DNA of 64,000 nt from positions 102,238,001-102,302,000 of the forward strand of contig OZ260663.1 of assembly GCA_965285935.1 (NCBI GenBank), given 5' to 3'. This DNA is from Ophelia neglecta (Eukaryota). Positions 1-41,315 of this stretch are shown in pieces (the stretch's first letter is position 1; each line of letters opens with the position of its first letter). Under the pieces are notes generated by a model. The model searched no databases. It saw only the letters and a program-made list of their open reading frames with translations, and was not told the DNA's origin. Position numbers and translations under genes: made by a program.

Positions 1-21
1 ATTATAAGGCCATTATATCAA

Positions 22-115
22 CGTTCGCAGCAATGAGCTTTAGTTATAAAGCGTCATGACGTCGATGTGTTGCTTTAAATGATTACTAGTCTTATATATG
101 ACTTATAAAACTTGA
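22..115 (+). pseudogene. Decayed RI-type LRR pseudo-exon (copy A)
   Basis: With small indels corrected it reads R-S-N-E-L-S-Y-K..V-M-T..V-A-L-(K)-M-I-T-S-L-I-K-L-GA|GTAAG. It has the same phase-2 'CTx GA|GT' end as the intact exon at 29935. It contains an 11-bp duplication (TATGACTTATA), frameshifts and no clear acceptor AG. Confidence 0.45.
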
Positions 116-470
116 GTAAGGACCATACAACTTCGTATGGGTGTTTAGCTGAACTACCTCCTGTTAATTTAGCTGAATAACATTATGGTAACACTTCAAT
201 ATAACAAATATATAAAAAAGCTACCAGGCCGGGACAATTCGAGTCATTACTTTTGTCAGTGAAGTACCCAGTTAAAAATTCTTTAATCTATCAGCGCACT
301 ACACAACTTAATATAAATTTCCGCAATCCTCAAGCCTAAGCAGTGTTATATTATACTTCGGGTTTACTAGTGATGGGCGACAGCAACACTCGGTAGGAAA
401 CCTGCTCCAACTAGTTCTATCTAGATATTTTAAAAGACAGCTTACTCTAACTTACTTCTTTATTTTACAG

Positions 471-546
471 TTTGTGGAGAAATCGCCTGTCAAATGGTAT
501 GAAGAGTCAAATCACGAAGGAGTTCGGTGACCGGGTCCAATTCTGA
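471..546 (+). CDS. Terminal coding exon of an NLRC3-like/RI-type LRR gene, copy A: (x)LWRNRLSNGMKSQITKEFGDRVQF*
   Basis: Pyrimidine tract and TTTTACAG acceptor at 461-470; phase-2 start T|TTG TGG AGA AAT CGC CTG gives the LxxNxL LRR motif; TGA TAA stops; phase-compatible with the 84-bp LRR exon type at 29935. Confidence 0.7.
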
Positions 547-719
547 TAACGAGATGCAAACCAGGTATACATAAAGACTGAGACTGTACAAATGATGTTT
601 GTGATATGAAAGGTATATCCCTTACTTTGAACATAACAGTTCAGTATATCCTTAACTTTGAATATAACAGTTCAGCATGCGTATATAACGATATATACCC
701 TAGGCTGCCGACACTCTCT

Positions 720-2180
720 AATAAAGCGACAATGAAATGATTCTTAGTAATTACAGGCCTGTTCCCATTCTGTCTGTATTCTCTACAGAGAAGCTAATTA
801 ACACAAGACTTAGGGAATATATATTTAATCATGAAAGAGTATATTATCCATAATTTGGCTTCAATAACACTTCAATTAGGAGTTTGATACTGTGAATCAT
901 AAGATTCTTCTCGATAAGCTGTGTAAATATGTTAGACGAGGTGCAGCATTAAGTAAGTGTCAGAGCTATTTATCTTATTGACAGTCATATATTAAATCAT
1001 CAAAAGATGGTTTTAAATTGTGAAGTGTCACAGAGGTTACAACCAGGAACGCTGTTATTTTATTATATGTTAACGACATCACCAATGCCTCAATTGTGTT
1101 TTTTCCACCTTTTTTGCTGGTGATACATGTGCTTTTATTAATGGTAAATAGTATTCAGCTGATACAAACAATGAATGAAGAACAAGCCAAGTTACTGGTA
1201 AAGTTTCATGCAAATAAGCGTTTTATGTTAAGAAAACAAACTTTATCATTATTGTTATGTGTAGGAAGGAACATGTATTAGTTATTAATGTGGTTCTTGC
1301 AGGCATATCTCTCGACAAGTTTAGTAACATTTTAGGCATCATCATCATAGATAAACAGCTAAAATGGTCAGATCATATTCCTATGCTAAGACCAAAAAAC
1401 TCTATGTGTATAGGTGTTTTGTATTAAGCTACAAAAACCCTTATATATATCGACTCTTGTAACCTTATATTAATCTTTCATTTATCCATTGTATTGAAGT
1501 TTAGTGCGCCGCATGTCCCCATCTTCTGTTGCCAAATTTCAAAATGCAAAAACAGGTTGTGAAATTTCTTTATTCTTCTTCATAATATTATCACCTTGTT
1601 TTAGTAACTTAACGTACAACAAGTTAAGAAGAATAAAACTTCTATTCGATGGCCATACTTATGTTTAGATTAAGCATTAACAACTACCCAAGATTGTCAA
1701 TGATTTTTTACTAGAAATAAGGACATTCACATGTATACTAATACAAGGCAGTCCTCGCAAGTCCATGTCCCTATGTCGAAAACGTCGGCATTTTCAAAAT
1801 CAGTAAAATTTAAAGGTGTAATGCTAAGGAATTTATTGTCATTTAGAGTTGAATGTTTTTGTTGTATTTCAAATTATGAGAATAATATAAAGACCTATCT
1901 TTGGTCAGATGCCATTTTACTGCTTCCCCCTCTATGGACAATTGTTTAATGAAGCTAAATCACTAGGCCTATTTGTTTAAATTTTGTTTTAAATAATACT
2001 AATTGAATGTATTTTTGTACCATCTGTACTGCTTTGCACACACTAATGTATGCTATTATTGTATCTAAGATGTGAACTCATCATCATGCCGTAGAGTCCA
2101 GTGCCCTTTGCTTCTGCTATTTCACGTATATTGTCTTGACCTTTAATATGTATATATGTACAAATCAGGAATAAATAAAC
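720..2180 (+). mobile_element. Degenerate CR1-like LINE, 3' portion (RT region plus tail)
   Basis: Broken-frame remnants of NYRP..IL, FDTVNHKILLDKL, LLF..YVND and FA(D)DT; ends in AATAAATAAAC. ORFs 1096 and 1731 are fragments of it. Confidence 0.75.
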
Positions 2181-2633
2181 ACTTTTTGAAATGAAATTAT
2201 TGCAATTATTTTTATAGTTACATTTTGAACATTGAATTAGTCATATTATTCTTGTCACAATCTGCGTACTTTTCGTCCAGCCGATATGAGAGCCATGTTT
2301 AGTATACAATGCCATTCGACTGTGACAACTTTATGTTCTTTAAAGTTCATAGGTCCCTCTTTGATCTTTTAATGAATTGCAAAATCCATGTTATCATGCT
2401 GAGATATATATGTCATATTAATATGTTGAGGGCATTATAAAATTAATTGAACACTCATGACTAGTAATTTCTATACATATGGTTATATAATATATTGAAT
2501 TAAAGTCTGAATATCGTACGCAATGCATTTCTTTGTTGTTATGTACGGGCTAGCTAATGTTCCAATTTTGAACCCTATAGCTAACAAACCGCAGATAACA
2601 AGGGAACTGACGTGCAGCATCCAACATTATGGT

Positions 2634-2983
2634 TGTGGGCGGGTAGATTCCCGCGCTTTCAAGTCCTAATAGACCGAACGCTAGTGTCCTACTAAAACTA
2701 CTTGATTGACCGCTAGGTGCCGCTCACCGCTACCTAGTCGGCACCTTTAAACCAAGTACAATCTCTTTCTCTACTGACCGGCTAAGAGCCAACATCGCTG
2801 GACAACTGCTCTGCCCAGTGGTGTACTATGTAGTACTGAATCCCGTAACAAACTGGATTCTACAACTCTTCTAATCGTTGTCCGCTTGATCATGTATTCG
2901 CATAACCATCGCCATATTAAACATTAAAACCCACGAAAGGAAATTGTCTTCATTCCCAGTAATGAGCAACCAAATCCCCTACA
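2634..2983 (+). repeat. Complete 350-bp LTR (U3-R-U5), + orientation
   Basis: TG...CA termini, TTTAAA box near 2746, two ATTAAA signals near 2915-2928, followed by TAA and a PBS-like sequence. Confidence 0.93.
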
Positions 2984-2986
2984 TAA

Positions 2987-3008
2987 TGGCGCCCGATGTG
3001 GGGCTCGA
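2987..3008 (+). other. 22-nt sequence complementary to the 3' end of tRNA-Lys(CUU)
   Basis: TGGCGCCCGATGTGGGGCTCGA versus the canonical Lys(CUU) complement TGGCGCCCAACGTGGGGCTCGA (20/22). The element's own PBS shares only the first 12 nt. Confidence 0.85.
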
Positions 3009-3304
3009 TTTTAATGTTTAATATGGCGATGGTTATGCGAATACATGATCAAGCGGACAACGATTAGAAGAGTTGTAGAATCCAGTTTGTTACGGGATTC
3101 AGTACTACACAGTACACCACTGGGCAGAGCTGTTGTCCAGCGATGTTGGCTCTTAGCCGGTCAGTAGAGAAAGAGATTGTACTTGGTTTAAAGGTGCCGA
3201 CTAGGTAGCGGTGAGCGGCACCTAGCGGTCAATCAAGTAGTTTTAGTAGGACACTAGCGTTCGGTCTATTAGGACTTGAAAGCGCGGGAATCTACCCGCC
3301 CACA
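3009..3304 (-). repeat. 3' LTR in - orientation (U3-R, lacking the last ~54 bp)
   Basis: Reverse complement of 2634-2929 with 2 mismatches seen; preceded on the - strand by the PPT. Confidence 0.93.
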
Positions 3305-3315
3305 TACTCCCCTGG
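3305..3315 (-). promoter_or_regulatory. Polypurine tract of the Gypsy element
   Basis: - strand CCAGGGGAGTA immediately before the LTR start TGTGGG. Confidence 0.75.
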
Positions 3316-3620
3316 TTAAAATATTTATGTCCTCATAAACTATATGAAGGTATAGCCAGCATTCATGAGGAAGTCTAACCTTAAGATTTTTTTTTTCCGA
3401 CATATATACATATAATGATGATACCAAGTTTAACAATTGTTTTAAAAACACACATTAATAATAAATCGAAAGTAAAGTGCACCCGGGTACGACAAAGGAT
3501 GGACATGATTAATCAATATCGTCAAACCATCATTTATAGTGTGTAGTATTTGAAATACACAGTGCACACATATAATGCAAGTAAGCTTGAAAAAAAAACT
3601 GTACAGATAATTGAGAGAAT

Positions 3621-6600
3621 TTACACGAAAATTTCTCTAACCACAGCCGAACATGGTAAATGATACGGGTTGCTGTGTTTTCCAAAATTCGCACGTGTTG
3701 ACCTTCGGGGTTGAAACAAGTGATTGTTCTCAGGAAATACATGGTCAACTGTTGGCGTTATAGGTTGAACAATTGGGGCTGCCATGTTATCCATGGCCTC
3801 AATAGCCTCAGTTTCATTTCGTGTCTGATTTGGGTCAGACATGAGAGCTCTTGGCTTTAAAGCCTCAAAAGTACTATGGGATTCATTTGGTGGCTTGCCT
3901 TTGGCTACAGTTATCAAATGTTCCGTGTTTGAGGGTTGTTCTGTCTCCGTTGAGATAACTTCCTTTGGGGGGGTGACCTGTAGAGCAAATTCAATTTCGC
4001 TATTACTATCGTGGTCACTTGCCTCAGAATAGACATCCAATTCTCTAGTACTGTCAATGTCCCTTTCATCAATTACAGGGGGTGTTTGTTGATGAGGCGG
4101 AACAGTAGATCGATCGGGGGTATCAGGAATAACATTGGGCATGGGGTTGTCTTGATACCATACTCTAGCATCTAAAATAGCTGACCTAGACACATTTTTG
4201 CCTTCGCCTTCTCCAGAGGCAGGTACAATGGTATACACATTATTACTTGGTTTGGCAACTACAATGAAAGGGGTTTCCAACCATGTATCCTGTATTTTAT
4301 TCCTACCTAAGGGTCTATTTCTAAGAAATTCACGAGCACCAATGGGGATGGGTTTATCGTCAACTCTGTGCTTGGTATTGTGGAGGTTTCTCCGTTGTTG
4401 GGCGTGTTTCTCAATTTCGTGAGACGCATGTTTATATGCTAATTGTAGGGTTTTCTGGTGATCACTGAGCCACTGGTCAACGTCCGCTACACCGTCCCGG
4501 CAATAAGTGGGACCAACACAACCCAGGGCAATGTCTATAGGAAGTATCGGGTCCCTACCAAACATAAGGAAATAAGGTGATAGGCCCGTTGATTTGTGTG
4601 GGGTGGCATTGTACGTATATGTCAGTTCTGGGAGCAAGGTAGGCCATTTACGTTTTTGCTCGACAGGAAGTGATTTCAACAGGTCATGCAAGGTCCTGTT
4701 GTACCTTTCTGTTTGCCCGTTGCCTTCCGGGTGGTATGGCGTAGTGCGGGTCTTTTTGATTCGATACAATTTACAGAGTTCTTGGATAATTTTACCCTCA
4801 AAACTTCGTCCTTGGTCCGAATGAAGACGGACGGGGACGCCGTATTGCTGGAACCATTCTTTGACCAATAGTTTCGCCACAGTGGTAGCTTTTTGGTCTT
4901 TGCATGGAATTGCTTTAGTAAGTTTGGTGAAAACGTCTGTTAAAATCAACACGTTTTCCAGGCCGTTGGACGCCTTATCGATCAAGGTAAAGTCCATGGC
5001 CAAAATCTCTAACGGTTTTGTAGCAATCAAGTTGGAAATGGTGGGTTTTGTGGGATTGGCTTTCGACACTAGACACCTTTGGCACAGTGTACAGTGTTTT
5101 TCCACATCCCTGTACATAGACACCCAAAAACAATGCTGCCTTATGAGTGAAAAAGTGCGTTCTACGCGTTGATGGCCTGCTTGGTCATGGCAGAGGTTTA
5201 ACATGTGGGCACGCAAAGCTCTGGGGATGACAAGCTGCCAAATATCATGACCATTTGACTGGATAAGTCTGTAAAGCAACTTGTTGCTCAGTTTGAGATT
5301 TTCCCATTTGCCACACAGACGCCTAACTTCCCAATTTTCTCTAGAGAGTTGACGACGTGTTGGCTTTTGTTTGTGAGCAAGAAGTGCTAAGACACGGGAG
5401 ATACAAGGGTCATTAATCTGAGAGTTTATTAATTCATCTTGGGAGTAATGACTTGCCCAGCTTAGGGGAGGGGTAGGAGTTTGCAAAGTAGCGCCCAACT
5501 TGATTGTTGAGATGGGGATACGGGTGGTGCCACTTACAGTGTCAATGAGCGAATTCACCCGGTCCGCTTGTATCTCTTTACACTCAAATCCTGGTACTCG
5601 ACCCAATGCATCAGCATTTGCGTTGGCCTTACCAGCTTTATATGATATGTCAAAGTTAAATTGGCCAAGTTGAGCAACCCAACGTGATTCCGTGGCTCCC
5701 AACTTGGCAGTTTTGAGGTACTTCAAGGGGTTATTGTCTGTAAAGACGGAGAAATGGGGACACCCAATGAGATAGTCCCTGAACTTGTCTGTTACAGCCC
5801 ACTTGAGAGCTAATAGCTCCAGTTTCATCGAGCTATAATTTCGGTCGTTTCTTTCCGCTGGTTTAAGTGAGCGGGAGGCGTAAGAAATAACGACTCTACC
5901 ATTATCCTGTTGCTGACTCAACACAGCACCCAGTCCAGAAAAACTTGCATCTGTCTCCACAATAAACGGCTTAGTAAAATCTGGGTAGCCGAGTACCGGG
6001 GAAGAACACAATTTGTCTTTCAAAGAGTCAAAGGCCGCTTGGCAATCACCTGACCATTTGCTCTGGAAGGTAGCGATTTCTGTGATGTTGCTAGTCTGTT
6101 TCCGCCTTTTTTTGGGTGGTGCTTTTCCTAGTAGGGAGTGCAAGGGATGAGAAATTTTGGCAAAACCTTTCACGAAGCGCCTGTAGAACCCGGCTAAACC
6201 GAAAAAACTTCTAAGTTGTTCTTCAGTCCTAGGTGATGGCCAATTTTTGATAACACTGATCTTTTCTGGATCTGGGGAGACACCTTGTTCGGAAACCACG
6301 TGACCTAAATAGTGAACTTCTTGCATAAAGAAACTACACTTCTTCAATTTAAGTTTTAAGTTGTGTTTTCTCAAAATTTCAAATACTACTCTCAGCCTCT
6401 TAAGGTGATCCTCAAAAGTAGCAGAATATACCAAAATGTCGTCCAGAAAAAAAATCAATGTCTCAAAGTTTTGCACATGAAAACAGGCCTCCATAAGCCG
6501 TGAGAATGTTGCCGGGCTATTGGCAAGACCAAATGGCATTCTCAAATATTCATAGAGATTACCCGTCCCAACACGAAATGCAGTTTTGTGGATGTCTTCC

Positions 6601-7961
6601 TCTGCCATGGGTACTTGGTAGTAACCTTGGCTCAAGTCCATCGAGGAGAAGTATTTTGACCCCTTCAATGCATCAAGAACTTCATCGACCCTTGGGAGAG
6701 GAAAGGCGTCCTTCACTGTTTTAGAATTTAACACCCTATAATCTACACATAAGCGGAGGGAGTTATCGTGATTACGAGCGATAACTATTGGTGCCGCGTA
6801 AGGACTACAGCTGGGTCGAATAATCTTTTGATTCACCAAGCCATCCAGATGCTCCTTTACCTCGGAAATCAAATGAGGAGGAATTTTTCTGTGAGGGATT
6901 TTGACTGGCTTGTCATCAACAAGATGAATTTTGTGAGTCACACTGTGAGTTTGAGAGAGTTGTTCACCCTCTTTGGAAAATACATCTTTGTACTCGCTAA
7001 GCAAGTTAATTGCCTCAGTTTTTTGGGCCAAGTCTAGAGAATTGTTGAATTTTACATCCCTCAACCAATCAGGGTATTCTGTTTCTGAAATAATTGTTGA
7101 GTTCACTTCAGAAAAAGTGTTTCTTTTTACCGACACTGCTATAGTCTCATCTTGAACTGTCACATCAACATAATCAGGGTTGGACAATTCAGCGTCAGTA
7201 TACAATGTGCCAAGTACCGAGCGTGCTGGTAACCAAATATCCTGTTCACTAAGGTTTATCACACTGACTCTAGCATTTTGTTTCTCAATACTTGTGAACG
7301 AATCTATAACAAGGATATTTCTTGGCAGACAAGCGTTATTCCCATTTGGCGCTTGTACTAAGCCTTGTATTTTCTTGTCTTTAGGAAAACATTTTGTCCG
7401 GCCATTGACAACTTTCATAGAGTTGGCAGGAATCATTACCGGTGTTGTCCCTACCCGCACCAAACTAGCTCTGTTCCTTGCAGGCAGAAACAATGATGCC
7501 AAGTTTCTCCATGTTGGAGGCAATAGTGACAAATTGGGACATTTACTGGTAATCTGGTTGAAGATATTGCAGCCTATGGTAACATTGACAAGCTGTTGAG
7601 GGCAACCTGTATCATCCTCAATAAAAAAAACCATATCAGAACAATTAACGCCGCCAATTGTGAGATTAAGTGTTGTAATACCCACATACGGAATGCTGAG
7701 ACCATTAGCAGCGGTGAGTTGGAATTTCGCCAAATCAGTATCAACGTGTTCATTCTCAAAATGTTGCTTAAAGTATGACAGTTTTATGAGGGAGACCTGA
7801 GCCCCAGTGTCAAGGAGACACTTACTTTCGATCCCTGCTAAGGTAGCAGTTTCAATTGGACAGTTTCCATATACCTTTCCATTGGTTTCAAGGCCAGAGT
7901 TATCTCCCTCCCATGGGTGGCCTGTGCTATGGGAGGAATCTAGTTTGGGGAGCCATTTGTA
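3621..7961 (-). CDS. pol: Gypsy Pol (PR-RT-RNase H-IN), expressed by -1 frameshift from gag
   Basis: The frame is open from 7961, upstream of the called ORF start, and includes protease LLDTGAQVS. RT LCVDYR, MPFGL and FLDD; RNase H ETDAS and TDNNPL; IN HHCC (CHDQAGH..CTLC) and core LHSDQG..GNGQTER. No stops. Confidence 0.96.
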   Translation of the reverse strand, partial: YKWLPKLDSSHSTGHPWEGDNSGLETNGKVYGNCPIETATLAGIESKCLLDTGAQVSLIKLSYFKQHFENEHVDTDLAKFQLTAANGLSIPYVGITTLNLTIGGVNCSDMVFFIEDDTGCPQQLVNVTIGCNIFNQITSKCPNLSLLPPTWRNLASLFLPARNRASLVRVGTTPVMIPANSMKVVNGRTKCFPKDKKIQGLVQAPNGNNACLPRNILVIDSFTSIEKQNARVSVINLSEQDIWLPARSVLGTLYTDAELSNPDYVDVTVQDETIAVSVKRNTFSEVNSTIISETEYPDWLRDVKFNNSLDLAQKTEAINLLSEYKDVFSKEGEQLSQTHSVTHKIHLVDDKPVKIPHRKIPPHLISEVKEHLDGLVNQKIIRPSCSPYAAPIVIARNHDNSLRLCVDYRVLNSKTVKDAFPLPRVDEVLDALKGSKYFSSMDLSQGYYQVPMAEEDIHKTAFRVGTGNLYEYLRMPFGLANSPATFSRLMEACFHVQNFETLIFFLDDILVYSATFEDHLKRLRVVFEILRKHNLKLKLKKCSFFMQEVHYLGHVVSEQGVSPDPEKISVIKNWPSPRTEEQLRSFFGLAGFYRRFVKGFAKISHPLHSLLGKAPPKKRRKQTSNITEIATFQSKWSGDCQAAFDSLKDKLCSSPVLGYPDFTKPFIVETDASFSGLGAVLSQQQDNGRVVISYASRSLKPAERNDRNYSSMKLELLALKWAVTDKFRDYLIGCPHFSVFTDNNPLKYLKTAKLGATESRWVAQLGQFNFDISYKAGKANANADALGRVPGFECKEIQADRVNSLIDTVSGTTRIPISTIKLGATLQTPTPPLSWASHYSQDELINSQINDPCISRVLALLAHKQKPTRRQLSRENWEVRRLCGKWENLKLSNKLLYRLIQSNGHDIWQLVIPRALRAHMLNLCHDQAGHQRVERTFSLIRQHCFWVSMYRDVEKHCTLCQRCLVSKANPTKPTISNLIATKPLEILAMDFTLIDKASNGLENVLILTDVFTKLTKAIPCKDQKATTVAKLLVKEWFQQYGVPVRLHSDQGRSFEGKIIQELCKLYRIKKTRTTPYHPEGNGQTERYNRTLHDLLKSLPVEQKRKWPTLLPELTYTYNATPHKSTGLSPYFLMFGRDPILPIDIALGCVGPTYCRDGVADVDQWLSDHQKTLQLAYKHASHEIEKHAQQRRNLHNTKHRVDDKPIPIGAREFLRNRPLGRNKIQDTWLETPFIVVAKPSNNVYTIVPASGEGEGKNVSRSAILDARVWYQDNPMPNVIPDTPDRSTVPPHQQTPPVIDERDIDSTRELDVYSEASDHDSNSEIEFALQVTPPKEVISTETEQPSNTEHLITVAKGKPPNESHSTFEALKPRALMSDPNQTRNETEAIEAMDNMAAPIVQPITPTVDHVFPENNHLFQPRRSTRANFGKHSNPYHLPCSAVVREIFV
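7891..7949 (-). promoter_or_regulatory. Programmed -1 ribosomal frameshift signal
   Basis: Slippery heptamer C CCA AAC (7949-7943) directly before the gag TAG; 6-nt spacer; stem CCTCCCAT/ATGGGAGG; loop AGGCCA can pair with downstream TGGCCT. Pol is in the -1 frame. Confidence 0.8.
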
Positions 7962-9196
7962 TCATTAGTGGACTTACTATGGTTTTTCTTGAAGTTTGGT
8001 TCATAGTTTTCCTTCTGGATTCCCCTCTCTGATGGGCAGTCGGGACTTTTGTGGCCCCTTCCCCCACAGTTATGACACACCCATTCCTTTGGGTTAATTG
8101 AAAATGATTTCTTCTTGGGTTTGGTACGGAACTCACTCTTTTGACTTGGTTGAGAAGGATGAGATTCAAAATTTCTCACTAGTTTCTCCATAAGTTGGGT
8201 CTGTGTAGCCAGCTGTTTCTGCTGTTCTTGAAGCAACTGGGCGAGTATAGGGTCAATATTACCGGACACAACAGAGGATTGAACAGATGAGGCTTTGGTT
8301 ACACTAGTGCAGGGTGGTCTATTACAATCAATAGTCCATTTGATAGCCCTATCCCTAAATTCAAAGAATGATAGAAGTGGAAGGTCTTCCTTGAGTTTGC
8401 GCAACTCTCTGCGTATGTGCTCATCTCGAACCCCTTCTGCAAACTTTTCCTTCAGTGCCTGATTCTTCTCAGAGTCAGAAATTTCATTCAATGAATTAAT
8501 TTTATTCATTATCTCCATCAGGGAAATACAATAGGTGTGAAAGGATTCATCTCTATTCTGGTTTCTAGTATAAAAACTGTTCCAAAGTGCCGAAACCGAA
8601 TAGCAATCTCCAAATACTTCCTTAATAACCTTAAGCATTTCAGAGTCAGAAGCAAATGAATCAAATCTGTATTTTATTTCTTGCTTGGCATTTCCTTTCA
8701 AATGCTCCAGAATGAAAGATTTCTTTTCACACATGGTCATGTTTTGGTTATCTAAGTAATACTTGATATCTTGCACCCAGTCAATGACATCAGGGTCATC
8801 ATTTTTGACTGGTCTACCTGGTAATTTGGGAAATTTCTTCTCCCTTGCTACAACAAATGTTCGGGGTAGAGATGCGTGTGAGGGAGGCGGGCTGGGGCCA
8901 ACTGCGTGACTAGTTCCAAGAGGGTTTGAACTAGGAACGTCAGGTGAAGTCGAGACAAATTGAGACTTCGGTTTAACATCCGGATCATTGTTCTGATATG
9001 ATGACAGGCCGATGGGCTTTCTGCCTGTCTCAACCACATGTCTATAATCCTTAAAGGAAGTAGACAATTGTAGAAATTTGTCCTGTAAGTTCAAAAATTC
9101 CTCCATGGAAACAGTTTTACCCTCAACAGGATTCATTTTCATTGGACCCAGGGCCGCCCCTCCCGCAGCATCGTCTCCACCCTCTTCGCTAGACAT
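7940..9196 (-). CDS. gag: Gypsy Gag (PNMA-like capsid plus CCHC zinc knuckle)
   Basis: About 418 aa from ATG 9196; capsid-like region KKFPKLPG..DWVQD..LKGNAK; zinc knuckle CHNCGGRGHKSPDC. Confidence 0.93.
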   Translation of the reverse strand: MSSEEGGDDAAGGAALGPMKMNPVEGKTVSMEEFLNLQDKFLQLSTSFKDYRHVVETGRKPIGLSSYQNNDPDVKPKSQFVSTSPDVPSSNPLGTSHAVGPSPPPSHASLPRTFVVAREKKFPKLPGRPVKNDDPDVIDWVQDIKYYLDNQNMTMCEKKSFILEHLKGNAKQEIKYRFDSFASDSEMLKVIKEVFGDCYSVSALWNSFYTRNQNRDESFHTYCISLMEIMNKINSLNEISDSEKNQALKEKFAEGVRDEHIRRELRKLKEDLPLLSFFEFRDRAIKWTIDCNRPPCTSVTKASSVQSSVVSGNIDPILAQLLQEQQKQLATQTQLMEKLVRNFESHPSQPSQKSEFRTKPKKKSFSINPKEWVCHNCGGRGHKSPDCPSERGIQKENYEPNFKKNHSKSTNDTNGSPN

Positions 9197-10219
9197 GGTG
9201 TACACATATGTATAGTCACCTCATGAAACCAGGATGAAATGTGATGAAAAGATGAGAACTCTGCAAGGGTCCCAACACCTACGTTGACATTCTCGAACGG
9301 TGGGTATTTTACTCTAGTAACCTACAATCGGAGGCCACCTGAGAACTGTTCAACGTGATCAAATTATTCCAGCCTAGAGTTCTAAGGGATCTTAATTATA
9401 CACATTCAATGATGAAATTGAATAGCTGGTGAGTTGATGAATGGAAATGAAATGGATGCGAGCAGGTGAGTACTCAATAATCAAACATGCATGGTAAATA
9501 TATAGCAGTCAAGCATGGCGACGTAATCCTACATATAAGTCAACATGCAAAATTTCAACAAGCAATCACATAAAGGTTCACATTAACAGTAAATTAAATG
9601 AAGTTCTCAATAATTAATCAACATGCAAACAGCGGGATGTGCAATCAACAAGGGAGCTTCAATGATAATTAGGTTTGCATGCAATCAGTTATTACAAGAC
9701 AGGCAAAAATGTTATTCAAATAGGCTTATTCCTTATTTACATTGAAATGCAAGTATTTGTACAGCACTAGGATTATAATTCAACACGATATACAATTATA
9801 AGATATGAACGCATGTGTGGACATCAGTTGAAGTCTTGAAAAAATGTCAATCTATGATTTATGACGACACCGGGGAACAAACAGCCCATATGAGTTCTCA
9901 ATATCTGAAATTGCAATGGCTCGCTGATGGCCGCTCTCCTTGGTGTACGAACATCGGTCGAAAAGTCTAGAACTAGTGCAGACTGAAGATTTATTACGAA
10001 GCCGGGGAACAAAGTTCTTACTCTTTGAACCTCAGTGGGCTCGCTGACGACCGCTCCCCGACGAAGGTAGCCCTCACGGTCCTTTGTACTGGGAGTTCTG
10101 TGGTCGGCGTAATGGTCAGTGGAGCCTAGCGTGATGTAATTCAGCCGTCGCCTTTGTATGAAGTTCAGATTGCCTTCTTAGGGTCACTATTCAGCACACA
10201 TATAACCATGCCAAAGCTG

Positions 10220-10231
10220 CATCGGGCGCCA
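10220..10231 (-). promoter_or_regulatory. Primer binding site (tRNA-Lys type)
   Basis: - strand TGGCGCCCGATG, 3 nt after the LTR end CCTACA. Confidence 0.88.
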
Positions 10232-10234
10232 TTA

Positions 10235-10417
10235 TGTAGGGGATTTGGTTGCTCATTACTGGGAATGAAGACAATTTCCTTTCGTGGGTTTTAATGTTTA
10301 ATATGGCGATGGTTATGCGAATACATGATCAAGCGGACAACGATTAGAAGAGTTGTAGAATCCAGTTTGTTACGGGATTCAGTACTACATAGTACACCAC
10401 TGGGCAGAGCTGTTGTC
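10235..10417 (-). repeat. Partial 5' LTR (R-U5 portion only, 183 bp), - orientation
   Basis: Reverse complement of 2801-2983; the U3-proximal half is absent. Confidence 0.92.
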
Positions 10418-10442
10418 GTAATGAGCAACCAAATCCCCTACA
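10418..10442 (+). repeat. 25-bp U5 terminus in + orientation forming the right integration end
   Basis: GTAATGAGCAACCAAATCCCCTACA is identical to 2959-2983 and is followed by the TSD TGGT. Confidence 0.9.
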
Positions 10443-10450
10443 TGGTGACA

Positions 10451-11306
10451 TGTGATTATATAAGTTTAATATAGATGAAAATGGGTAAGTACAAATGATA
10501 CTTGCAGGTAACCATTCCAACAACAGAACAACAAGGTCAACAAATTACAATACTGCATTACAAAGAATTACACAGATTGACATAAACATTGAAAATAAAG
10601 CACAAATACTGAGTTTACTTCCTGGCAAAAGGCTGAACTTGCGGGTTGCAATGTCAGAGAACGCGAGGCAAATTGAAAAGGTTTGCTGAAGGATGGGAGA
10701 TGAGATGATCAACGTCCAAATATCCTAGTGGAGGTCGGCAGTGACAGGCGTTGGCGTCGGGAAGCATCCGAGGGTACGTAGACGACCAACCGGGTGTCAA
10801 GATGTGGTGGGCGACCGTTAATAAGCCGAGCGGCGTACAGTCACACACTAACAGAAATAAAGTTATCTTCCTAACCTCAGGCCTGCAAGAGGGCAGACAC
10901 TCAATCACACATCGGAAAGTAAATGGATACCATACTTGCAAGATCACATGGCCGTTATGGCAGATGACACAGTGGGGGCAATGGATGTAATGCCCCCAGC
11001 CTACAGTCTCCTGGTAGTGTCCCGCCGATTACAGTATCTCCACCACAGGAATCGCGAGCACTTTCTCCAACCGAGAATAACTCCACTATAGTGCAGGCTC
11101 CACATAGTGGAAACGACTTACAAGTTTGGGTGGAAAGCCTCGGTTCCACATAGTTGACTATTACACACTAATAAGATTTACATGGCAATATTGCAGTGCG
11201 TAACATTGTTTACTGTTCTAACACCACTCACGTGTTTATAAACGTTTCTAAGCACATCGATAGCTAACTCGTTTGTACAATGATTTCATTAATTTATTTC
11301 ATCACA
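10451..11306 (-). repeat. Possible solo LTR-like repeat (second copy at 44225-45059)
   Basis: TGTGAT...ATCACA inverted termini, ATTAAA near the - strand end, GC-richer than the flanks. No TSD, PBS or PPT found. Confidence 0.35.
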
Positions 11307-11315
11307 CCTGGTATT

Positions 11316-11990
11316 CACTAACTTCATGAAACAAGGCATAGCTTACAAACTCCAGAAAATTATTCACTATATTTCCCACGTATTGAATGTACCCTTCAAT
11401 TATGGTACCAACTACAAAAAACGTTTTCTCTCTCTATACCTGTCAGATTGCACAATTAAGAACTGCTACGCATGTGGAAGAAACTGACCTAATTTTTGCG
11501 TGACACCATCATGGTTCACTGATCTTTAATCTAGTTATTTTTGTTTTTGTTTCCTTTTATTTATTTTTTTTCTCAAATTTGTTGGGGGTGGGGTGGGCGA
11601 CCACCACTTACGGCTTCGGCTATTGGTGGCGTCCTGGCTCAAATATATGCTATGCATTTTCATGCAACCGAGGTATTTTTTTCTCTACTTCATGATTCAC
11701 TATATTACGTCTTCTATTATCATGTGCTTGTCATTGAATAACTGTGGATGGTCTGTGCTACAATGTATGATTTTATGTATTTCTTGTTTATAAAGTGTAC
11801 TATTGTGGTCATTGAGCACATGCTCATGCATTAAAAAAACTCATTTTTTTGCATTGTATTATATGCACTAACAAGGCGAAAATATGTACCATATGTATCA
11901 TATATTGGATTTACTACCTGGTTTAGAGTTTGTATTTCTGTATATATGTTTTATTGAAGCCAAATAAATGAATTACTTACTTACTTACTT
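11316..11990 (+). mobile_element. 5'-truncated LINE 3' end with (TTAC)n tail; copy A only
   Basis: Absent from copy B (GGTATTTGCTG at 45336); AATAAA followed by (TTAC)4; ATT duplicated at both junctions. Confidence 0.75.
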
Positions 11991-14900
11991 ATTTGCTGCA
12001 CATTTGCGATCCGTCGACGTCACATAACAAATGACGTCATTTCAAGTCACCATCAAAGGCTACTCACAACACAAAGATCAAAGCTTAATCGGCTACAATG
12101 AAAACTAGGTGTAGATGGAGGAAATGTAGAATAATAATTTGAGGATTTTTTAATATGGGATGATATAATTGATTATGAGCATGTGCACATGTTCAGAGAT
12201 TCAAAAATGGCTGTTCTGAATATAGTCAACAGTGCTCCATGATGCGAGTAGGTGCACAAAACGAAACCATCACAGTTCAACGAAGGTTAGAAATTAAATA
12301 TGCTCTAGGAGAGCTTAAGATGAACTACTAGCCTAATACTGGTGAGATGAACTCTAACTCGTATCATGAACCTCAGGAATACTTTCACTGCAACACCTAT
12401 ACTGTACTGTAGGGATAGGGATACACAAATAATAAAACAATGACATATAATGAGGCAATTTATACCTGCTGCTGTATGTGGGATTTTATTGCAGCAAATG
12501 CAAATTTCAATAACTAAACCGTTATAGTATCTGTTAAGATCTCTTGAGGAAGAGGGTGGGCGGGGGGGGATGGGCCCTTCGGTTCGGTTGACTTGGATGT
12601 CCCTTGGGTGGCGTATATGGCTAAGAGACCCCAGAGTTAATTGGATTAGGGAGGGAGGGGGGGGGGGCAGTCCCATGTTTGACTGGGAGGCTTCGAGCCG
12701 GTTGGGTTTGATAAACTTCACGGTGAACAGGGAGTTGGGGAGGGGGTATGGTGGAGAGGGCGACCCCAATTGTGCGTCAATCTAGTACAGATTAAGAACT
12801 TGACAGGAGATATAGTCTCTTACTAATTCCGATATCGCTCAAAACGTCTCTCGGGGGCGTTCCACAAATGGACATTATATTTATTGATACTGACAACTTT
12901 ATATGTTTATTAAGTCATATCTACCGTTTGGAAAAATATGTTGGATTTCAACTGCTAGCGACCGGCGAAAAAACAAATTTCAAACTAACTCTGTGTCAAC
13001 TTTTCCTGGGAAAAAAATGTTGTTGCGTGAGCACTTTCTGGTGGGTAGGTGTATATTTGCTTTCTTCGTCATTTTTTTTGCCAATTTGACCTTGAGAATA
13101 TAGTTAAAGATCGGCGGCGAAGGTGTCAGCAGGTCCCCTTGTGCCCTTCTAAGCTATTTCTTTCAAAGCCACTATTTGCGTCTCAATTTTCTGAGTCATC
13201 CAACGTTCTTTTAACGCCTTGAAGTACTATTTACTCTGGTGAAATACCAAGTCCTTGCTGTACAGCGAATAGAAGGCAAACACTTTGCAAGCATATCATA
13301 TGATTTCTTTAATAAGGTTTACAGTCTGAATATAGCTATATTGGGTCAATTGTAAGCTATGTATTTGAAAATCTGACTAAAAACACGATGCCGATAGATG
13401 ATCTCCCAAAAGCATACTTGAATTGTAAGGTCCTCATGATCCAGGTATAGCGCATGGTACATGGAAACCACTTAAGTTATATTCAGATGTGAGGGTTGAA
13501 GTGGTTTTGCTTGGGGGGGGGGGGGGGGGGGCAGGGGGGGGGCAGACACTCACTGGTGTTTGAAGACGGTTATAATAGTATATGCAGCCGTTAAGATCTA
13601 AGATTCGGCTATATTTGTTTTTTTTTGTGAGCATGGCGGAGCTATGACAGGTGAGTAAATGGTATAACAAAGAAACCCACTCTCGTCAAAAGCCGTGCTG
13701 TCATCTATAACCGCTCCACACCGGGCATAATGTCAGTGTGAATAAAACTATCTACATTGGACATTTGTATAGGCGGCGTATTAATAGCGCGATTGATTTA
13801 TTGATTAATTGTAGCGTGCATTAAATACTAGTTAATACAGGTTATAGCCGTTAAGATCTATGAGTCGGCTATATATGTTTTAGTGAGCATATTATTGCGC
13901 GATTGATTGATTGTATCGTGCATTAACCACAATTGGAAAAATTAATACATAAGATAAAACCAGCATTACCAGCTTAAACACATACAAATAGTAGAAGCGT
14001 GCATGAAACTGTTTCAGAGCAGGCATCTCCCCCAGTAAGGGCATACATTTACAAGTCTACATTGCCATCGGGTACAGATACAAATGCAGATGACAAGAAG
14101 ACGTGGAAAAAGGAGAGTTTTCAACCCGTGTTTATATGAGCCCTGGCTTTATCTGCATTTTACCTCCACATCCCCATGCAAATGACTAACTCGTATCTGC
14201 ACTGGAGGTGTATGGTAAATCACTAAATATAAATTCCATGGGACATTAATTGAAATACATTTAATAGCAACATTTGACTGCATAAAATTGACAAACAGTG
14301 CTCAAACATACCCACTACCGTGATTTTATAAACGTTAGGCCGCATCCAGCCGTCAACAAATGGCTAGTATCGCCGAGAAAAAGTGCCCTTTGGCGTAATC
14401 CGTTCTTAGCTTTGCAAGCGAAAATAGAAAAGATATTTCATGACAAACGGTTGAACCTTTTTTTCTACTGGGGGCCCTTGACAAACAGCCGGACTTCTGG
14501 TTGTCTTTACATTACTGACGCATGTTCATAGTGGGCTACAATAATAAGGCGCTTTTTTTCCATTGGAAAAATATGATTGTCATTATTGGTTACATTGTTA
14601 CTCTTATTCAAGCCTTTGCAGGGAGACAAATATATATATTTTCTAAACATCCATCCGAATTGGACTTAACTAGTATCAACGGCTTGTTCACTCATTTATT
14701 TTCAAGGAATCCTGGTACAGTCGGGGCCCCTTTAACAACATTGAAATCTCTGTTTTCCATAGGCAAGGGACAAACCTTAATTTTACAATAGTCCTCCATG
14801 ACCGCATCCCTGTATCAGACTGATTTACAACGAACTTATTTGTACCCTCTGCATAGTTTGTACCTTTTTTAAAAAATAATTATATTGTTTCTCTTAGGTG

Positions 14901-16570
14901 TTAAAACACAGCAGTATGTGAAATAAGAGATGTATGGTTTTAATATATGCGCCAACAACTGGTCATGTTCCTTCATCAAAGGTAATATACTTAATCTAAG
15001 CTTCTAGAAAGTTGTCCGACCCCAAGACACAATAATTAGAGTCGTAAAACCAATGTAATATTTCCAAGCTATAGGCCTATTGTAATAAATGTCTTAATCC
15101 CTTGTTAGAAGATAAATACACGAAAAACCTCACATATGTCTAACAAGACCTAGATATATTGTGACGTTTTGACAGGTATTTAGTGGTCATTAAGCATATC
15201 CTAATGGCATGACTACGATGGATAGCTCATATATTCAATCAATTAAATCATTAGTCGGTTATTGCCTAATAATTTTTGCTATCGTAAAACCTAAATACAT
15301 ATTGCTTATATAGGATTATAATTTGTTATAGCCGTCAGCTGGGCATCACTTGTTTGTTTGATTACTCGTGTCTAGTGATTCAAGGGGGGGGGGGGGTATA
15401 GGTGTATCTTACGCATACCATTTTTCTGACCTGCTATCCCGTCGTTATGGGCCAGTGGTTGGCAGGAAATCAGACTTTCTTAATCAGGGAAGTCATATTA
15501 TATTCGAGGTGAACGTGAATCAATCGTTGCTCTCGATTTGTGACAAGGAAATCTAATTTCTCTTCCCTTGTGAAGAACCAAATTTGTTTGATGTGAATTG
15601 TTCAAGGAATATTTCTATTCACACCCTTTACAAACTGTCACAAAGTTAATAATTGATTAATAAGAAACGTAATAAGAGCACTTTAAGGCCACAACAACTG
15701 TGATAACCCCTCCCTCCTCGCCTCCCCAAGCACCCCCCCCCCCCCCCGCCTCCCCCACCAGTGAATAGGCACATATCGTATGCCTTGAACAAACTATATA
15801 CAATATTAAAATTCAACTTACAATGCGACGCAATAGGAAGAATATCCTTAAATTTCGAATATCACTGGACGAGTAGCCTGGTAGAAACAACCATAAATGG
15901 TCAATCCCAAAACGCCTGGTAGAGACTAACTGGTGTTATTAACCTCGAGACGCCTTGGAAATTACAGTGAAAGCTCCTTGGGTCGGTTGGGTAAGGCGTG
16001 TGATTTCGCCTTGAAATGAGGTCACAGATCTATTATTGGGGATATGTACATATCTCTTAATGATAAAGGATTTACACAGCGCTTGGAAACTACGCAGCCA
16101 AGTTTGCTATGTTCAGGGACGGCACTAGAGAGGCCCCATCGGGCCTGTGACCCATTCAGACAGTGCAGTTTTTGGGGACCGCACCCTTCCGACCCACCTG
16201 CCTCTGTGTCTGAAACATGGCTTGTTCCGAATCGCATATGGTCAGGTAGGGTTGGCATCATGAAAACGTCATAAGAACCACCCTGAAACACTGGGACAGA
16301 TTATGCGGCACATTGTGACATGAACACTTGTTTCTACAGAAAACTCCTGTAAATTAGAATACAAAAACAAATAAATGTACTTAAAATAATTACAGTCCTT
16401 AAATGGCTGTAGGTAACGGGCGTTACCTTATGCAAATTGGTCGTCATACAAATGAGGCTCAGCAATGCTATCTGTGTTCAGGTGTACATGGCCAACTAAG
16501 GAACTGGAGATTGTCCGTATTTCTGATAGTTATTGTCGACACAAGTAACTCGCAAACCCGGGTGCGTGAT

Positions 16571-16690
16571 ATAAAGACAAAACACCGGGAACAATCCTGC
16601 CTGCCTTTATCGGGGCTTTACTCAAAGACAGGATGATGCAGGCAGGTTTGTCCTTCGAAAATTCAAAGCTACCCGGTGTTTTGTCTTTAT
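16571..16690. repeat. Small foldback/MITE-like inverted repeat (also 50066-50185)
   Basis: Outer arms ATAAAGACAAAACACCGGG / CCCGGTGTTTTGTCTTTAT; inner arms ACAATCCTGCCTGC / GCAGGCAGGTTTGT. Confidence 0.7.
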
Positions 16691-19600: not shown

Positions 19601-20379
19601 GGGTTAATACTGTTCAGCCATGCTCAGCTATTTTGTTCATTTTGGCCATTTTTCCTGCCTTCCTGCTCAGACTGTTCTGGCATTTGATTGGTCTAGAGCA
19701 GTGACCTATAAAGGTCACCCACCAGCAAGACCTGTCACCGATATAGGTCAGCCACCCGACTGCTTGCGAAAGAAATCACACACTGGCCTATGTCGAAAAG
19801 CGACACCAGGGGGCCGTCCTCCCACACCACTCGGCCACCGTGCCTCCCCTGATATAAGGTATAGATTCCTCACCACACAAACTTCTTTCCCGTGGTGGGC
19901 AAAAAGTGGGTGTTTCTACTTGTACCTTCCCTGTCTTGTTTGACAACATCAGTTGGCGATCCCCTCCTACCATATATATATATACCATATATATATCCCC
20001 TAAAATACCTAAGGGAATAACGTTACATGTATATGCTTTCTAGCTACAACGCTTTATTCTTATCTTGGGTGAAAAACATAGCAGAGCACTAACGGTCGAG
20101 GGCGGAGTTATGTAAGATAAATCATAGTTTAAACCATTTAGAATGGCAAAAATCCCGGCTAGGCATCGGTTTTCCTTTTTTCTGACGGCCACCACACCAT
20201 TTAGTCTCTGGGGATGACATAAGCCCTACGGAGAGACGTGTAAATGGAATAGTGTCCGCTTGCAGTTTAAGGTCACAAGTCAGCCAGTGGCGTCCTCACG
20301 CGAGTGACAACAGAACTCTACCAAGTAGTGCGGACATATGTGATATATACTTCATTACGTTATGCTTTATTGTTGTTTG

Positions 20380-22150: not shown

Positions 22151-22999
22151 CAATAAAGCAGGTTGGATCCCCTTCCTTTATAGATCCTGTTCAATCTGGA
22201 AAATCTTTTTAGGGGATGAACTATTCTACATTGAATTTACTACGACTTACCTCAAAAGCCGCCGTGTACTTCTGTCAATGTAGAGAACATCAGACCAATT
22301 GACCTTGATAGGATCACAACTTGAGTACCGTGCGCGAAAGTGACAGGGAACCAATACCACGTGTATAGTTGCCTACAACTGGACAGGCAAGAGCAATTGG
22401 TCCCCCTATGGTTACGATTGAGTAAAGTCCCCTCTCATGTTAGAAGTTGTAGGAGATATTGTTGTAAGGGCAGATACTCCTCAAACTGCGTGTGATAGAA
22501 ATTATGTGTTTAAAAGTGTAATGTTTGGTGAGTACACAAGACATGTTAGGCTGTAGTCGTCATTAGGTGTTAACTTCGAAGTTGTTTGCTATAGATATCA
22601 AGATGAGCAACCAATTTTAATGTGTTTGGCATCCAAATATGTCCAGCCAGACGTGGTTGTGGGTTACTGAATAGTACCTTAAAGGCTTTACAATTATTAA
22701 GATAGTGTACACACAACATATAATGTGTAACTGTTAAGAGTGGACGAAAAGCTCTGCTTTGCAAGAGTCCTGTTGACCTTACGATCTATTATACTGGTGT
22801 TGTACCTCGCTATTTATACCTTATATTATATGGCTTCAAAAGGATTTTTAATTTTGTCTTTAAGCGCATGAGAAAAGCAATGATGAGTGTCCCTTTACAA
22901 TTTGTTTTCTATTTTCATTTGGTATAATTATTAGCCCTTGCCTAGTTTTAAATATATAGAGTTTGGCCTACATCAATCTGTTATCGCCTAAACATCCAG

Positions 23000-41212: not shown

Positions 41213-41221
41213 TTATATCAA

Positions 41222-41315
41222 CCATCGCAGTAATGAGCTTTAGTTATAAAGCGTCATGACGTCGATGTGTTGTTTCAAATGATTACCAGTCTTATATATG
41301 ACTTATAAAACTGGA
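41222..41315 (+). pseudogene. Decayed LRR pseudo-exon (copy B)
   Basis: Homolog of 22-115; ends CTT ATA AAA CTG GA|GTAAG. Confidence 0.45.

What the first reader, a model, noticed from the sequence alone, without database searches (positions are those of the whole stretch)
471..549. Hypervariable last LRR exon: 30% nucleotide divergence, nearly all amino-acid-changing, inside a high-identity duplication
Seen: ungapped comparison of 471-550 with 41671-41750 gives 24/80 differences. 14 of 24 residues change and the stop moves by one codon, while only two codons differ purely synonymously (AAG/AAA, GAC/GAT). By eye, the adjacent 50 intronic bases differ at 8/50, 301-360 at 4/60, and downstream DNA at only a few percent. 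Both copies keep the acceptor and the frame. Established: LRR surfaces of innate-immune NLR-type receptors often evolve under diversifying selection. Inference: strong positive or balancing selection, or conversion from a diverged paralog, focused on the C-terminal LRR/cap of an immune receptor. The ORF track misses this entirely.
Basis: partly seen in the sequence, partly recalled or inferred. Interest (0 to 1): 0.82.

Follow-up and report, generated by a model that had tools for sequence, protein, structure and literature searches.

The report
Fast-evolving last exon of NLR paralogs
This is the 24-codon last exon of a large family of NACHT immune-receptor genes; it changes amino acids two to three times faster than its own introns, a pattern already known for immune receptors, and the two copies compared here look like orphan gene ends from different subfamilies.

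Summary
In detail: every count was reproduced (24/80, 14 of 24 residues, 8/50, 4/60, stop moved by one codon).

1. The diverged island is about 1.4 kb, not 80 bases. It runs from 666 bases before the window to about 716. In it copy A carries a tract of another paralog subfamily (92-98% to copies at the far end of the chromosome). That tract sits in DNA that is 94-99% identical to copy B on both sides, which is the mark of ectopic conversion or recombination.
2. Within the island the exon is still the peak (30% against 12-17%). This holds across 31 paralogs:
   - exon 2.4 substitution steps per site, introns and UTR 1.0;
   - ML omega 1.94, omega=1 rejected (p about 0.003);
   - no stop and no indel in any copy.
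   The fast codons are 2, 3 and 5, the x positions of an L-x-x-N-x-L motif, and the tail.
3. For A against B alone dN/dS is 1.0. Neither copy has a NACHT exon upstream, although at least 30 of 56 paralogous exons do. B also carries unique changes at conserved positions.

No RNA data exist. This is a new member of a known kind.

The parts
441..470 (+). 3' end of the last intron of copy A: a CTAAC branch-point-like motif, a pyrimidine tract and a CAG acceptor
   Evidence: Kept in all 31 aligned paralogs. It has 0.83 substitution steps per site, against 2.43 in the exon.
471..546 (+). Terminal exon, copy A: one base completing a split codon (phase 2), then 24 codons (472-543) and a TGA stop (544-546). 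A second in-frame stop lies at 547-549.
   Evidence: Open in all 31 copies with no indel. The phase matches the donor of the NACHT exon of its 97% twin. A has no substitution unique to it within its subfamily.
547..740 (+). Probable 3' UTR of copy A, with AATAAA at 720-725 and a 30-base tandem duplication (615-644 and 645-675)
   Evidence: Read directly from the sequence. Bases 544-560 are as variable as the exon, at 2.9 steps per site, because the stop shifts among copies. Bases 561-640 have 1.14 steps per site.
1..716 (+). Part of the 'class I' tract of copy A that lies inside the window. The tract starts 666 bases before the window and is the low-identity island against copy B.
   Evidence: It is 92-98% identical to paralogs at C5:0.03-1.75 Mb and 83-89% identical to B and its subfamily. 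Both sides of it are 94-99% identical to B.
41641..41670 (+). Branch-point-like motif, pyrimidine tract and CAG acceptor of copy B
41671..41749 (+). Terminal exon, copy B: phase 2, 25 codons (41672-41746) and a TAA stop (41747-41749)
   Evidence: It has five substitutions unique to B in 72 bases, against 0.78 expected from its flanks (P = 0.0013). Four of them change otherwise conserved residues: N4K, M10L, G19D and V22I. It scores lowest of the 35 closest family members against the family profile.
41213..41888 (+). Counterpart in copy B ('class II') of the island 13-718
   Evidence: 84-85% identical to A. About 95% identical over 3 kb to class II paralogs that do have a NACHT exon.
714..27270 (+). 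High-identity arm of the segmental duplication. Its partner is 42319-60456. It is interrupted in A by a retrotransposon complex at 2634-10442.
   Evidence: Self-BLAST gives 93-99% identity in ten colinear blocks.
42319..60456 (+). Partner arm of the duplication in copy B
37143..41212 (-). Insertion of about 4 kb, specific to class II, in the last intron just upstream of the point where A and B become alignable again. By eye it holds pieces of LINE-like endonuclease and reverse-transcriptase ORFs on the minus strand.
   Evidence: A's bases -64..-2 match 37081-37142, and base 13 onward matches 41213 onward. The ORFs are listed. The insertion is shared with the class II paralogs. The 291-aa ORF at 40345-41217 has no Pfam hit.
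33114..36277 (+). LINE-like element in B's last intron. It is homologous to the element at -3829..-672 upstream of A.
   Evidence: 96.5% identical to A's copy and colinear with it. Reverse-transcriptase-like ORFs are listed.

Best explanation
471-546 and 41671-41749 are two paralogous copies of the short last exon (24-25 codons) of a large, lineage-specific family of NACHT (NOD2/NLRP3-like) receptor genes. The exon begins in the middle of a leucine-rich-repeat-like motif (L-x-x-N-x-L-S...). Three things add up to the 30% difference. (1) Shown: across the family this exon gains amino-acid changes two to three times faster than the surrounding intron and UTR. The changes fall at a few codons: 2, 3 and 5, which are the x positions next to the conserved Asn, then 8, 11 and the last two residues. 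The scaffold residues (L1, L6, S7, F18, G19, R21, V22), the frame and the acceptor are kept. Inferred: this is diversifying selection on a ligand-facing surface. (2) Shown: copy A sits in a tract of about 1.4 kb of a different subfamily, embedded in DNA that is otherwise 94-99% identical to copy B. Inferred: this is an ectopic gene-conversion or recombination patch. It means A and B are compared across an old subfamily split of 12-17% in non-coding DNA. (3) Shown: copy B has extra changes of its own at conserved positions, and neither copy has a NACHT exon upstream. Inferred: both are orphan 3' ends left by partial duplication, and B at least is no longer under the family's constraint.
For: Family and coding status:
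- There are 57 DNA matches and 56 profile matches in the genome, all with an open frame.
- In 31 aligned copies there is no stop, where 8.5 are expected from 175 substitution steps (P = 2e-4). There is no indel, against 20 gap runs in 295 flanking columns. Every copy has a CAG acceptor.
- At least 30 of 56 copies have a same-strand NACHT exon 7-80 kb upstream with no other terminal exon in between.
- That exon encodes NACHT, NOD2_WH and HD2 domains. Its nearest solved relatives are NOD2 and NLRP3, at E about 1e-19.
- Its donor phase matches this exon's acceptor phase.

Acceleration:
- Fitch steps per site on a tree built from the flanks are 0.98 in the intron, 1.14 in the UTR and 2.43 in the exon. 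Second codon positions reach 2.9 (conditional binomial p = 4e-18).
- On the exon's own tree the value is still 2.14, against 1.07 for the flanks on their own tree.
- Codon-level counts are 152 non-synonymous and 23 synonymous changes.
- ML with GY+F3X4 gives omega 1.94. Fixing omega at 1 costs 2dlnL = 9.1, p about 0.003.
- Codons 2, 3, 5, 8, 11, 23 and 24 exceed the flank rate after Bonferroni correction.
- In ten independent sister pairs pN is 7.5%, against about 2.5% in the flanks of nine of them.

Conversion patch:
- In 250-base bins, A against class II is 94-98% from -4000 to -672, 83-89% from -250 to 716, and 94-99% beyond.
- A against class I shows the reverse pattern.

Orphan status:
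- There is no NACHT or repeat exon in the 20 kb upstream of A, nor in the 41 kb between A and B.
- There is no NACHT exon of the local type between C5:102012487 and 102347024.

B's own changes:
-. A has none, while its twin that has a NACHT exon has eight in 89 bases.
Against: - Synonymous change in the exon is also raised: 23 steps against 14.7 expected, p = 0.03. So are the 17 mostly non-coding bases after the stop. Selection on the protein alone does not predict either.
- B's excess of substitutions over its flanks cannot come from relaxed constraint alone, because neutral DNA should not outrun its neighbours.
- In sister pairs the N:S ratio of 1.58 is not significant by itself (p = 0.17).
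- The set of fast codons was chosen after seeing the data.
- LRR identity rests on a motif. Pfam gives nothing.
- No transcript evidence exists.
- The NACHT lists are incomplete: 94 of 247 and 40 of 56 candidates were scored. A very diverged or distant 5' exon cannot be excluded.
- The penultimate exon was not found in any copy within 8-20 kb.
Confidence: 0.6

Rival explanations
1. A mutational cause rather than selection: the roughly 90 bases from the acceptor to just past the stop are a hot spot. This could be short-tract conversion from many paralogs, templated multi-base replacement, or targeted hypermutation. Selection would then only remove changes at scaffold residues.
For: - Synonymous steps are 1.6 times the flank rate.
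- Bases 544-560 after the stop are the most variable stretch, at 2.9 steps per site.
- The twin of A (L002) has six changes within ten bases that remove its stop.
- The apparently orphan copy B has five unique changes where 0.78 are expected.
Against: - ML omega is 1.94 and significantly above 1. A hot spot with purifying selection would give omega below 1.
- The excess falls on particular codons, while neighbouring codons have no non-synonymous change.
- The exon tree and the flank tree largely agree: 297 against 320 flank steps. That speaks against frequent exon-only conversion.
- B's unique states are found in none of the other 30 copies.
- Very young pairs (L004/L005, L015/L016) show no exon change, so the rate is not uniformly high.
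Confidence: 0.2
2. Plain decay: A and B are dead gene fragments, and the exon peak is relaxed constraint after they lost their 5' exons. No positive selection is involved anywhere.
For: - There is no NACHT exon upstream of either copy.
- B changes four residues that are conserved in 90% or more of the family.
- B scores lowest against the family profile.
Against: - Neutral decay cannot make an exon diverge 2.5 times faster than the adjacent intron.
- A has no unique substitution at all.
- The acceleration is seen family-wide, including in copies linked to a NACHT exon.
- Neither copy has a stop, a frameshift or a damaged acceptor.
Confidence: 0.1
3. The introns are unusually conserved rather than the exon unusually fast. 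Concerted evolution homogenises the non-coding flanks, while selection preserves old exon lineages, as described for MHC genes.
For: - Both synonymous and non-synonymous exon divergence exceed the flank divergence. This is what older exon lineages inside younger introns would look like.
- NACHT exons of the local cluster are 96-100% identical, while the terminal islands differ by 14-17%. Homogenisation therefore acts unevenly along these genes.
- A conversion patch is directly visible.
Against: - Flanks close to the exon are only slightly more conserved than DNA 0.5-1.8 kb away: 2.0-2.7% against 3.4-3.7% for B and L017.
- The exon and flank trees are largely congruent.
- This model still needs diversity-preserving selection on the exon. 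It is a variant of the best explanation rather than an opponent.
Confidence: 0.1

Closest known systems
Zebrafish NLR-B30.2 (NLR-C) family (Howe et al. 2016, PMC4852459, read)
   Same: It has hundreds of lineage-specific NLR genes clustered on one chromosome, each with one large NACHT exon. Gene conversion acts differently on the NACHT part and the C-terminal part. NACHT is kept homogeneous within groups, while the C-terminal recognition module shows high dN/dS and exchange between groups. The same contrast is seen here: NACHT exons are 96-100% identical in the local cluster, while the terminal islands differ by 14-17% and one has been swapped.
   Different: In zebrafish the selected module is a B30.2 domain, and the LRRs are reported not to be the selected part. 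Here the fast part is a 24-codon LRR-like terminal exon and no B30.2 domain was seen. The repeats after the NACHT exon are atypical: LRR_6 does not hit them and the second exon resembles the NACHT exon's tail. The last intron is very long, more than 8-20 kb.
Plant NLR (R-gene) clusters: hypervariable solvent-exposed x residues of xxLxLxx, and chimeric paralogs made by sequence exchange. Examples are Cf-4/9, RGC2 and RPP8. This is from my own knowledge of the literature; the RPP8 paper 10.1101/694240 was listed but not read.
   Same: Amino-acid change is concentrated at the x positions around the conserved Leu and Asn of an LRR. Evolution is by birth and death, with partial copies. Patches are exchanged between paralogs.
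   Different: Plant and animal NLRs are held to be independent inventions. Here only one half-repeat and a tail are involved. The excess was measured against intron rates and a whole-exon omega, not with site models.
MHC class I and II genes: introns homogenised by recombination while the peptide-binding exons stay diverse
   Same: The exon is more diverged than the introns on either side, and synonymous sites are raised too.
   Different: In the MHC the pattern is among alleles of one locus under balancing selection. Here it is among paralogs spread over several chromosomes, and no population data were available.
Lamprey VLR loci: an incomplete germline gene flanked by many orphan LRR cassettes that are copied in somatically (my own knowledge)
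   Same: There are orphan LRR-coding pieces with intact frames lying near receptor genes.
   Different: No evidence of somatic or germline copying from these orphans was found. A is the unchanged partner and its gene-linked twin is the changed one. The cassettes here carry ordinary splice signals.

Membership tests
Terminal coding exon of an animal NLR (NACHT-LRR) gene | A NACHT-domain exon lies upstream on the same strand within gene distance | tested here: not met
   Met for at least 30 of 56 paralogous exons, at 7-80 kb. Not met for A or B. There is none in the 20 kb upstream of A, none in the 41 kb between A and B, and none of the local type between C5:102012487 and 102347024. The NACHT lists are incomplete, so a diverged or very distant exon is not excluded.
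Terminal coding exon of an animal NLR (NACHT-LRR) gene | A functional acceptor, a conserved frame, and an intron phase compatible with upstream exons | tested here: met
   All 31 copies have CAG, a pyrimidine tract and CTAAC, with no stops or indels. The acceptor is phase 2, as is the donor of the NACHT exon in L035.
Terminal coding exon of an animal NLR (NACHT-LRR) gene | Spliced transcripts use the acceptor | not testable with these tools
   No RNA run holds the stretch. The three runs found behave as DNA, and their contigs cross 471 unspliced. A protein search with the NACHT exon found no annotated gene model at E <= 1e-20.
Leucine-rich repeat (RI-like or NLR type) | A match to an LRR profile | tested here: inconclusive
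   Pfam gives no hit for the 24-25 residue peptides, which are too short. LRR_6 hits none of this gene cluster genome-wide. Only the motif L-x-x-N-x-L-S-[DG]-x-hydrophobic is present, with L6 and S7 invariant and N4 kept in most copies.
Sites under diversifying (positive) selection | dN/dS significantly above 1 | tested here: met
   For the family, ML omega is 1.94 with 2dlnL = 9.1 against omega = 1, and counts are 152 N to 23 S with binomial p = 0.01. For the pair A-B alone it is not met, with omega 1.0. For sister pairs omega is 1.58, not significant.
Sites under diversifying (positive) selection | The non-synonymous rate exceeds the neutral rate of linked non-coding DNA | tested here: met
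   There are 2.64 non-synonymous steps per non-synonymous site against 1.0 per flanking site, P = 1e-24. This holds on the exon's own tree. Sister-pair pN is 7.5%, about three times the flank divergence of nine of the pairs.
Sites under diversifying (positive) selection | Codon site-model likelihood tests after recombination screening | not tested
   codeml and HyPhy are not available here. Only a one-ratio model was fitted.
Ectopic gene-conversion or recombination patch | A tract of low identity bounded on both sides by high identity to the same partner, and itself closest to a third paralog | tested here: met
   A against B, L015 and L017 is 94-98%, then 83-89%, then 94-99%. A against L003 and L004 is 92-98% inside the tract and 86-93% outside it. 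The borders are at about -670 and about 716. Donor and direction were not determined.
Pseudogene or gene relic | Disabling lesions (stop, frameshift, lost splice site) | tested here: not met
   Neither A nor B has any. B does have four replacements at residues conserved in 90% or more of the family. A has none.

The most novel reading that the evidence does not exclude
The orphan terminal-exon cassettes (A, B and other copies without a NACHT exon) are not debris. They would be a standing reservoir used to diversify receptor C-termini, either as donors of short conversion tracts into NACHT-linked genes or as alternative last exons reached across very long introns. That would make a germline, cassette-based diversification system for an invertebrate-style NLR family.
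Probability: 0.07. Interest if true: 0.7.

Novelty: new member of a known kind. Interest (0 to 1): 0.35.

Why it matters
It adds a clean case, measured against the exon's own introns, of a short C-terminal LRR-like exon being the fast-evolving part of an expanded animal NLR family. The NACHT exons of the same cluster are kept nearly identical. It also captures a 1.4-kb exchange between subfamilies that lie about 100 Mb apart on one chromosome. This points to codons 2, 3, 5 and the tail as the likely contact residues in a receptor family whose ligands are unknown. For annotation, terminal exons in this family cannot be assumed to belong to a gene: the two in this window probably do not.

Tried and rejected
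- **RNA test:** only three runs hold the stretch. They cover intron and exon alike, and their contigs cross the acceptor, so they are DNA and say nothing about splicing.
- **Penultimate exon:** regex scans for LRR motifs, a profile of the terminal exon, and tblastn with the NACHT exon and its tail found nothing in the window. They also found nothing in the 8-20 kb upstream of any copy. A weak hit 955 bases upstream in the L030 group did not look coding.
- **Pfam on the two peptides and on the 291-aa ORF at 40345-41217:** nothing.
- **LRR_6 over the genome:** no hit in these clusters.
- **Word-index protein search with the 580-aa NACHT frame:** nothing at E <= 1e-20, so no public gene model could confirm the C-terminus.
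- **Rfam on 1-1000:** nothing.
- **Repeat-element idea:** the common ends at about 9-13 and 644-653 first suggested a mobile unit. I rejected this. The breaks are a class-specific LINE insertion at 13 and a 30-base tandem duplication at 644, and homology continues beyond both.
- **Genome-letter allowance:** Four copies (C5:1214386, 616571, 243688 and C2:110798059) are therefore not in the alignment. A later search still returned two loci, which I used. After that I fetched no more genome DNA and did not walk along the genes.
- **Exon joining:** Each piece was searched by reference on its own.
- **Organism:** I did not try to identify it.

Full report
**1. The observation**

The two stretches align without gaps. 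471-550 against 41671-41750 differ at 24 of 80 bases. In the frame that starts at 472, copy A has 24 codons and a TGA at 544-546. Copy B has 25 codons and a TAA at 41747-41749. Fourteen of the 24 shared residues differ, and two codons differ only synonymously. The exon is more diverged than its flanks: 24/80 against 70/543, Fisher p = 3e-4. However, 'nearly all amino-acid-changing' carries no information for this pair. With 57.2 non-synonymous and 14.8 synonymous sites, the 17.5 and 4.5 differences give pN 0.306 and pS 0.303.

**2. What the exon sits in**

Self-comparison shows a colinear duplication, 13-27270 against 41213-60456. It is 93-99% identical from about 714 onward but only 84.7% over 13-644. 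With the 20 kb upstream of the window added, A against B and B's closest relatives falls into three zones:
- 94-98% from about -4000 to -672, which is a shared LINE-like element;
- 83-89%, or unalignable, from -666 to 716;
- 94-99% beyond that.

Against a second group of paralogs at the other end of the chromosome (C5:0.03-1.75 Mb, 'class I') the pattern is reversed: 92-98% inside the tract and 86-93% outside it.

So copy A, together with its 97% twin at C5:101763487 on the minus strand, carries a class I tract of about 1.4 kb inside a class II-like background. This is the signature of ectopic conversion or recombination. The break at base 13 is a class II-specific insertion of about 4 kb (37143-41212). 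The break at 644 is a 30-base tandem duplication in A. The break at 716 is a segment of about 430 bases that A and its twin lack.

**3. The family**

- The first 700 bases have 57 matches in this 762-Mb genome.
- A profile of the exon peptide finds 56 places, all with an open frame.
- I aligned 31 copies. Every one has the CAG acceptor, the pyrimidine tract, a CTAAC motif, 72 ungapped exon bases and no stop.
- From 175 inferred substitutions, 8.5 stops would be expected (P = 2e-4). The flanks have 20 gap runs in 295 columns and the exon has none.
- The consensus is L-x-x-N-x-L-S-[DG]-x-M-K-R-Q-M-K-K-E-F-G-D-R-V-x-F.

The genome has at least 247 NACHT candidates, each in an open exon of about 585 residues. 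At least 30 of the 56 terminal exons lie 7-80 kb downstream of one on the same strand, with no other terminal exon in between. The NACHT exon belonging to A's twin encodes NACHT, NOD2_WH and a weak HD2 domain. It is closest to NOD2 and NLRP3 among solved structures. Its donor splits a codon after two bases, which matches the one-base start of the terminal exon. About 300 bases downstream of it lies a second exon that resembles the NACHT exon's own tail.

**4. A and B themselves**

No NACHT exon or repeat-like exon is present in the 20 kb upstream of A or in the 41 kb between A and B. A DNA search with the local NACHT exon finds eight copies at 96-100% identity in the C5 93.5 and 100.6-103 Mb region, but none between 102012487 and 102347024. 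B's upstream 12 kb is colinear at 95-98% with the last intron of class II paralogs that do have a NACHT exon. Both copies therefore look like 3' ends left by partial duplication. The lists are incomplete, so this is likely but not proven.

**5. Is the exon fast, and why**

- On a tree built from the non-coding flanks, Fitch steps per site are 0.98 in the intron, 0.83 in the acceptor region, 1.14 in the UTR and 2.43 in the exon (codon positions 2.4, 2.9 and 2.0). The 17 bases after the stop reach 2.9, because the stop shifts among copies.
- The excess survives on the exon's own tree: 2.14 against 1.07. The two trees are largely congruent.
- Codon-level reconstruction gives 152 non-synonymous and 23 synonymous changes.
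- A one-ratio codon model gives omega 1.94. Fixing omega at 1 costs 4.5 log-likelihood units, so 2dlnL = 9.1 and p is about 0.003.
- Codons 2, 3, 5, 8, 11, 23 and 24 exceed the flank rate after correction. Codons 1, 6, 7, 18, 19, 21 and 22 have almost only synonymous change.
- By established LRR structure (my own knowledge), the residues just before and after the conserved Asn lie on or next to the concave beta face. Codons 2, 3 and 5 map there. This mapping is inference.
- In ten independent sister pairs the exon has 43 non-synonymous and 7 synonymous differences, giving pN 7.5%. Flank divergence in nine of them is about 2.5%. The three youngest pairs show 0-1 change.
- Synonymous change is also somewhat raised, at 1.6 times the flank rate (p = 0.03). 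This leaves room for short conversion events or older exon lineages.

**6. Lineage-specific changes**

Within class II, B alone has five unique exon substitutions against 0.78 expected (P = 0.0013). Four of them replace residues that 90% or more of the family keep: N4K, M10L, G19D and V22I. B also scores lowest of the close family against the profile. A has no unique change. Its NACHT-linked twin has three in the exon, plus a cluster of six changes in ten bases that removes the stop.

The 22 exon differences between A and B are therefore mostly old differences between subfamilies at the fast codons, plus B's own changes.

**7. What could not be done**

- No RNA run exists for this stretch. The three runs found are DNA.
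- No public protein matched the NACHT exon at E <= 1e-20.
- Pfam, LRR_6 and Rfam add nothing for the exon itself.

**8. Comparison and verdict**

The closest described system is the zebrafish NLR-B30.2 family. There gene conversion keeps NACHT exons homogeneous, while the C-terminal recognition module shows high dN/dS and exchange between groups (PMC4852459). The same division of labour is seen here, but with a 24-codon LRR-like exon as the variable part.

The finding is real and well measured, but it fits a known kind of immune-receptor evolution.

Noticed in passing
window 32-162 (core 33-72): This piece of the last intron is 100% identical between A and B over 33-72, although the surrounding island is only 85% identical. 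Solitary copies of 32-162 occur elsewhere at 88-89% identity (C5:101965531, 1170559, 2165776, 2687375; C7:102282830). It is non-coding in all frames and contains a TGACGTC-like palindrome. It may be a small mobile element or a conserved intronic element.
   Followed up: partly
L002:1640-1660 (C5:101763487 locus, minus strand), equivalent to window 541-550: A's 97% twin, which does have a NACHT exon, differs from A by six changes within ten bases at the stop codon. This turns TGA into a sense codon and lengthens the protein by two residues. It looks like one complex or templated event rather than six point mutations.
   Followed up: partly
G000:C5, 93.5 and 100.6-103.0 Mb (NACHT exons listed): Eight NACHT exons of the C5 cluster (93.5 and 100.6-103.0 Mb) are 96-100% identical over 1.77 kb. 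The terminal-exon islands of the same genes fall into classes that differ by 14-17%. Homogenisation is therefore uneven along the gene.
   Followed up: partly
window 2634-10442: A retrotransposon complex is present in A but not in B. It has inverted 296-base repeats (2634-2929 and 3304-3009), a 1446-residue pol-like frame on the minus strand (3624-7961) and a 426-residue frame (7943-9220).
   Followed up: no
window 60626-63999, minus strand: There are long open frames with a CCHC zinc-knuckle-like stretch and integrase- and RT-like text. This is probably another LTR retroelement just beyond the end of the duplication (60456).
   Followed up: no
L032 around 8825, minus strand (C2:113.18 Mb): A 72-residue open frame reads like a scavenger-receptor cysteine-rich (SRCR) domain. 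It lies a few kb from a terminal-exon copy.
   Followed up: no
upstream of the window, -5400..-4300 (L014 about 4600-5700), and the matching places in most paralogs: A minisatellite with a unit of about 40 bases lies in the last intron. It is present in nearly all family members, with very variable copy number.
   Followed up: no
window 27271-41670: The scan's other note on this window (s1-739902) speaks of an LRR exon plus a terminal exon. My scans found only the terminal exon. No second LRR-like exon turned up in this stretch.
   Followed up: partly
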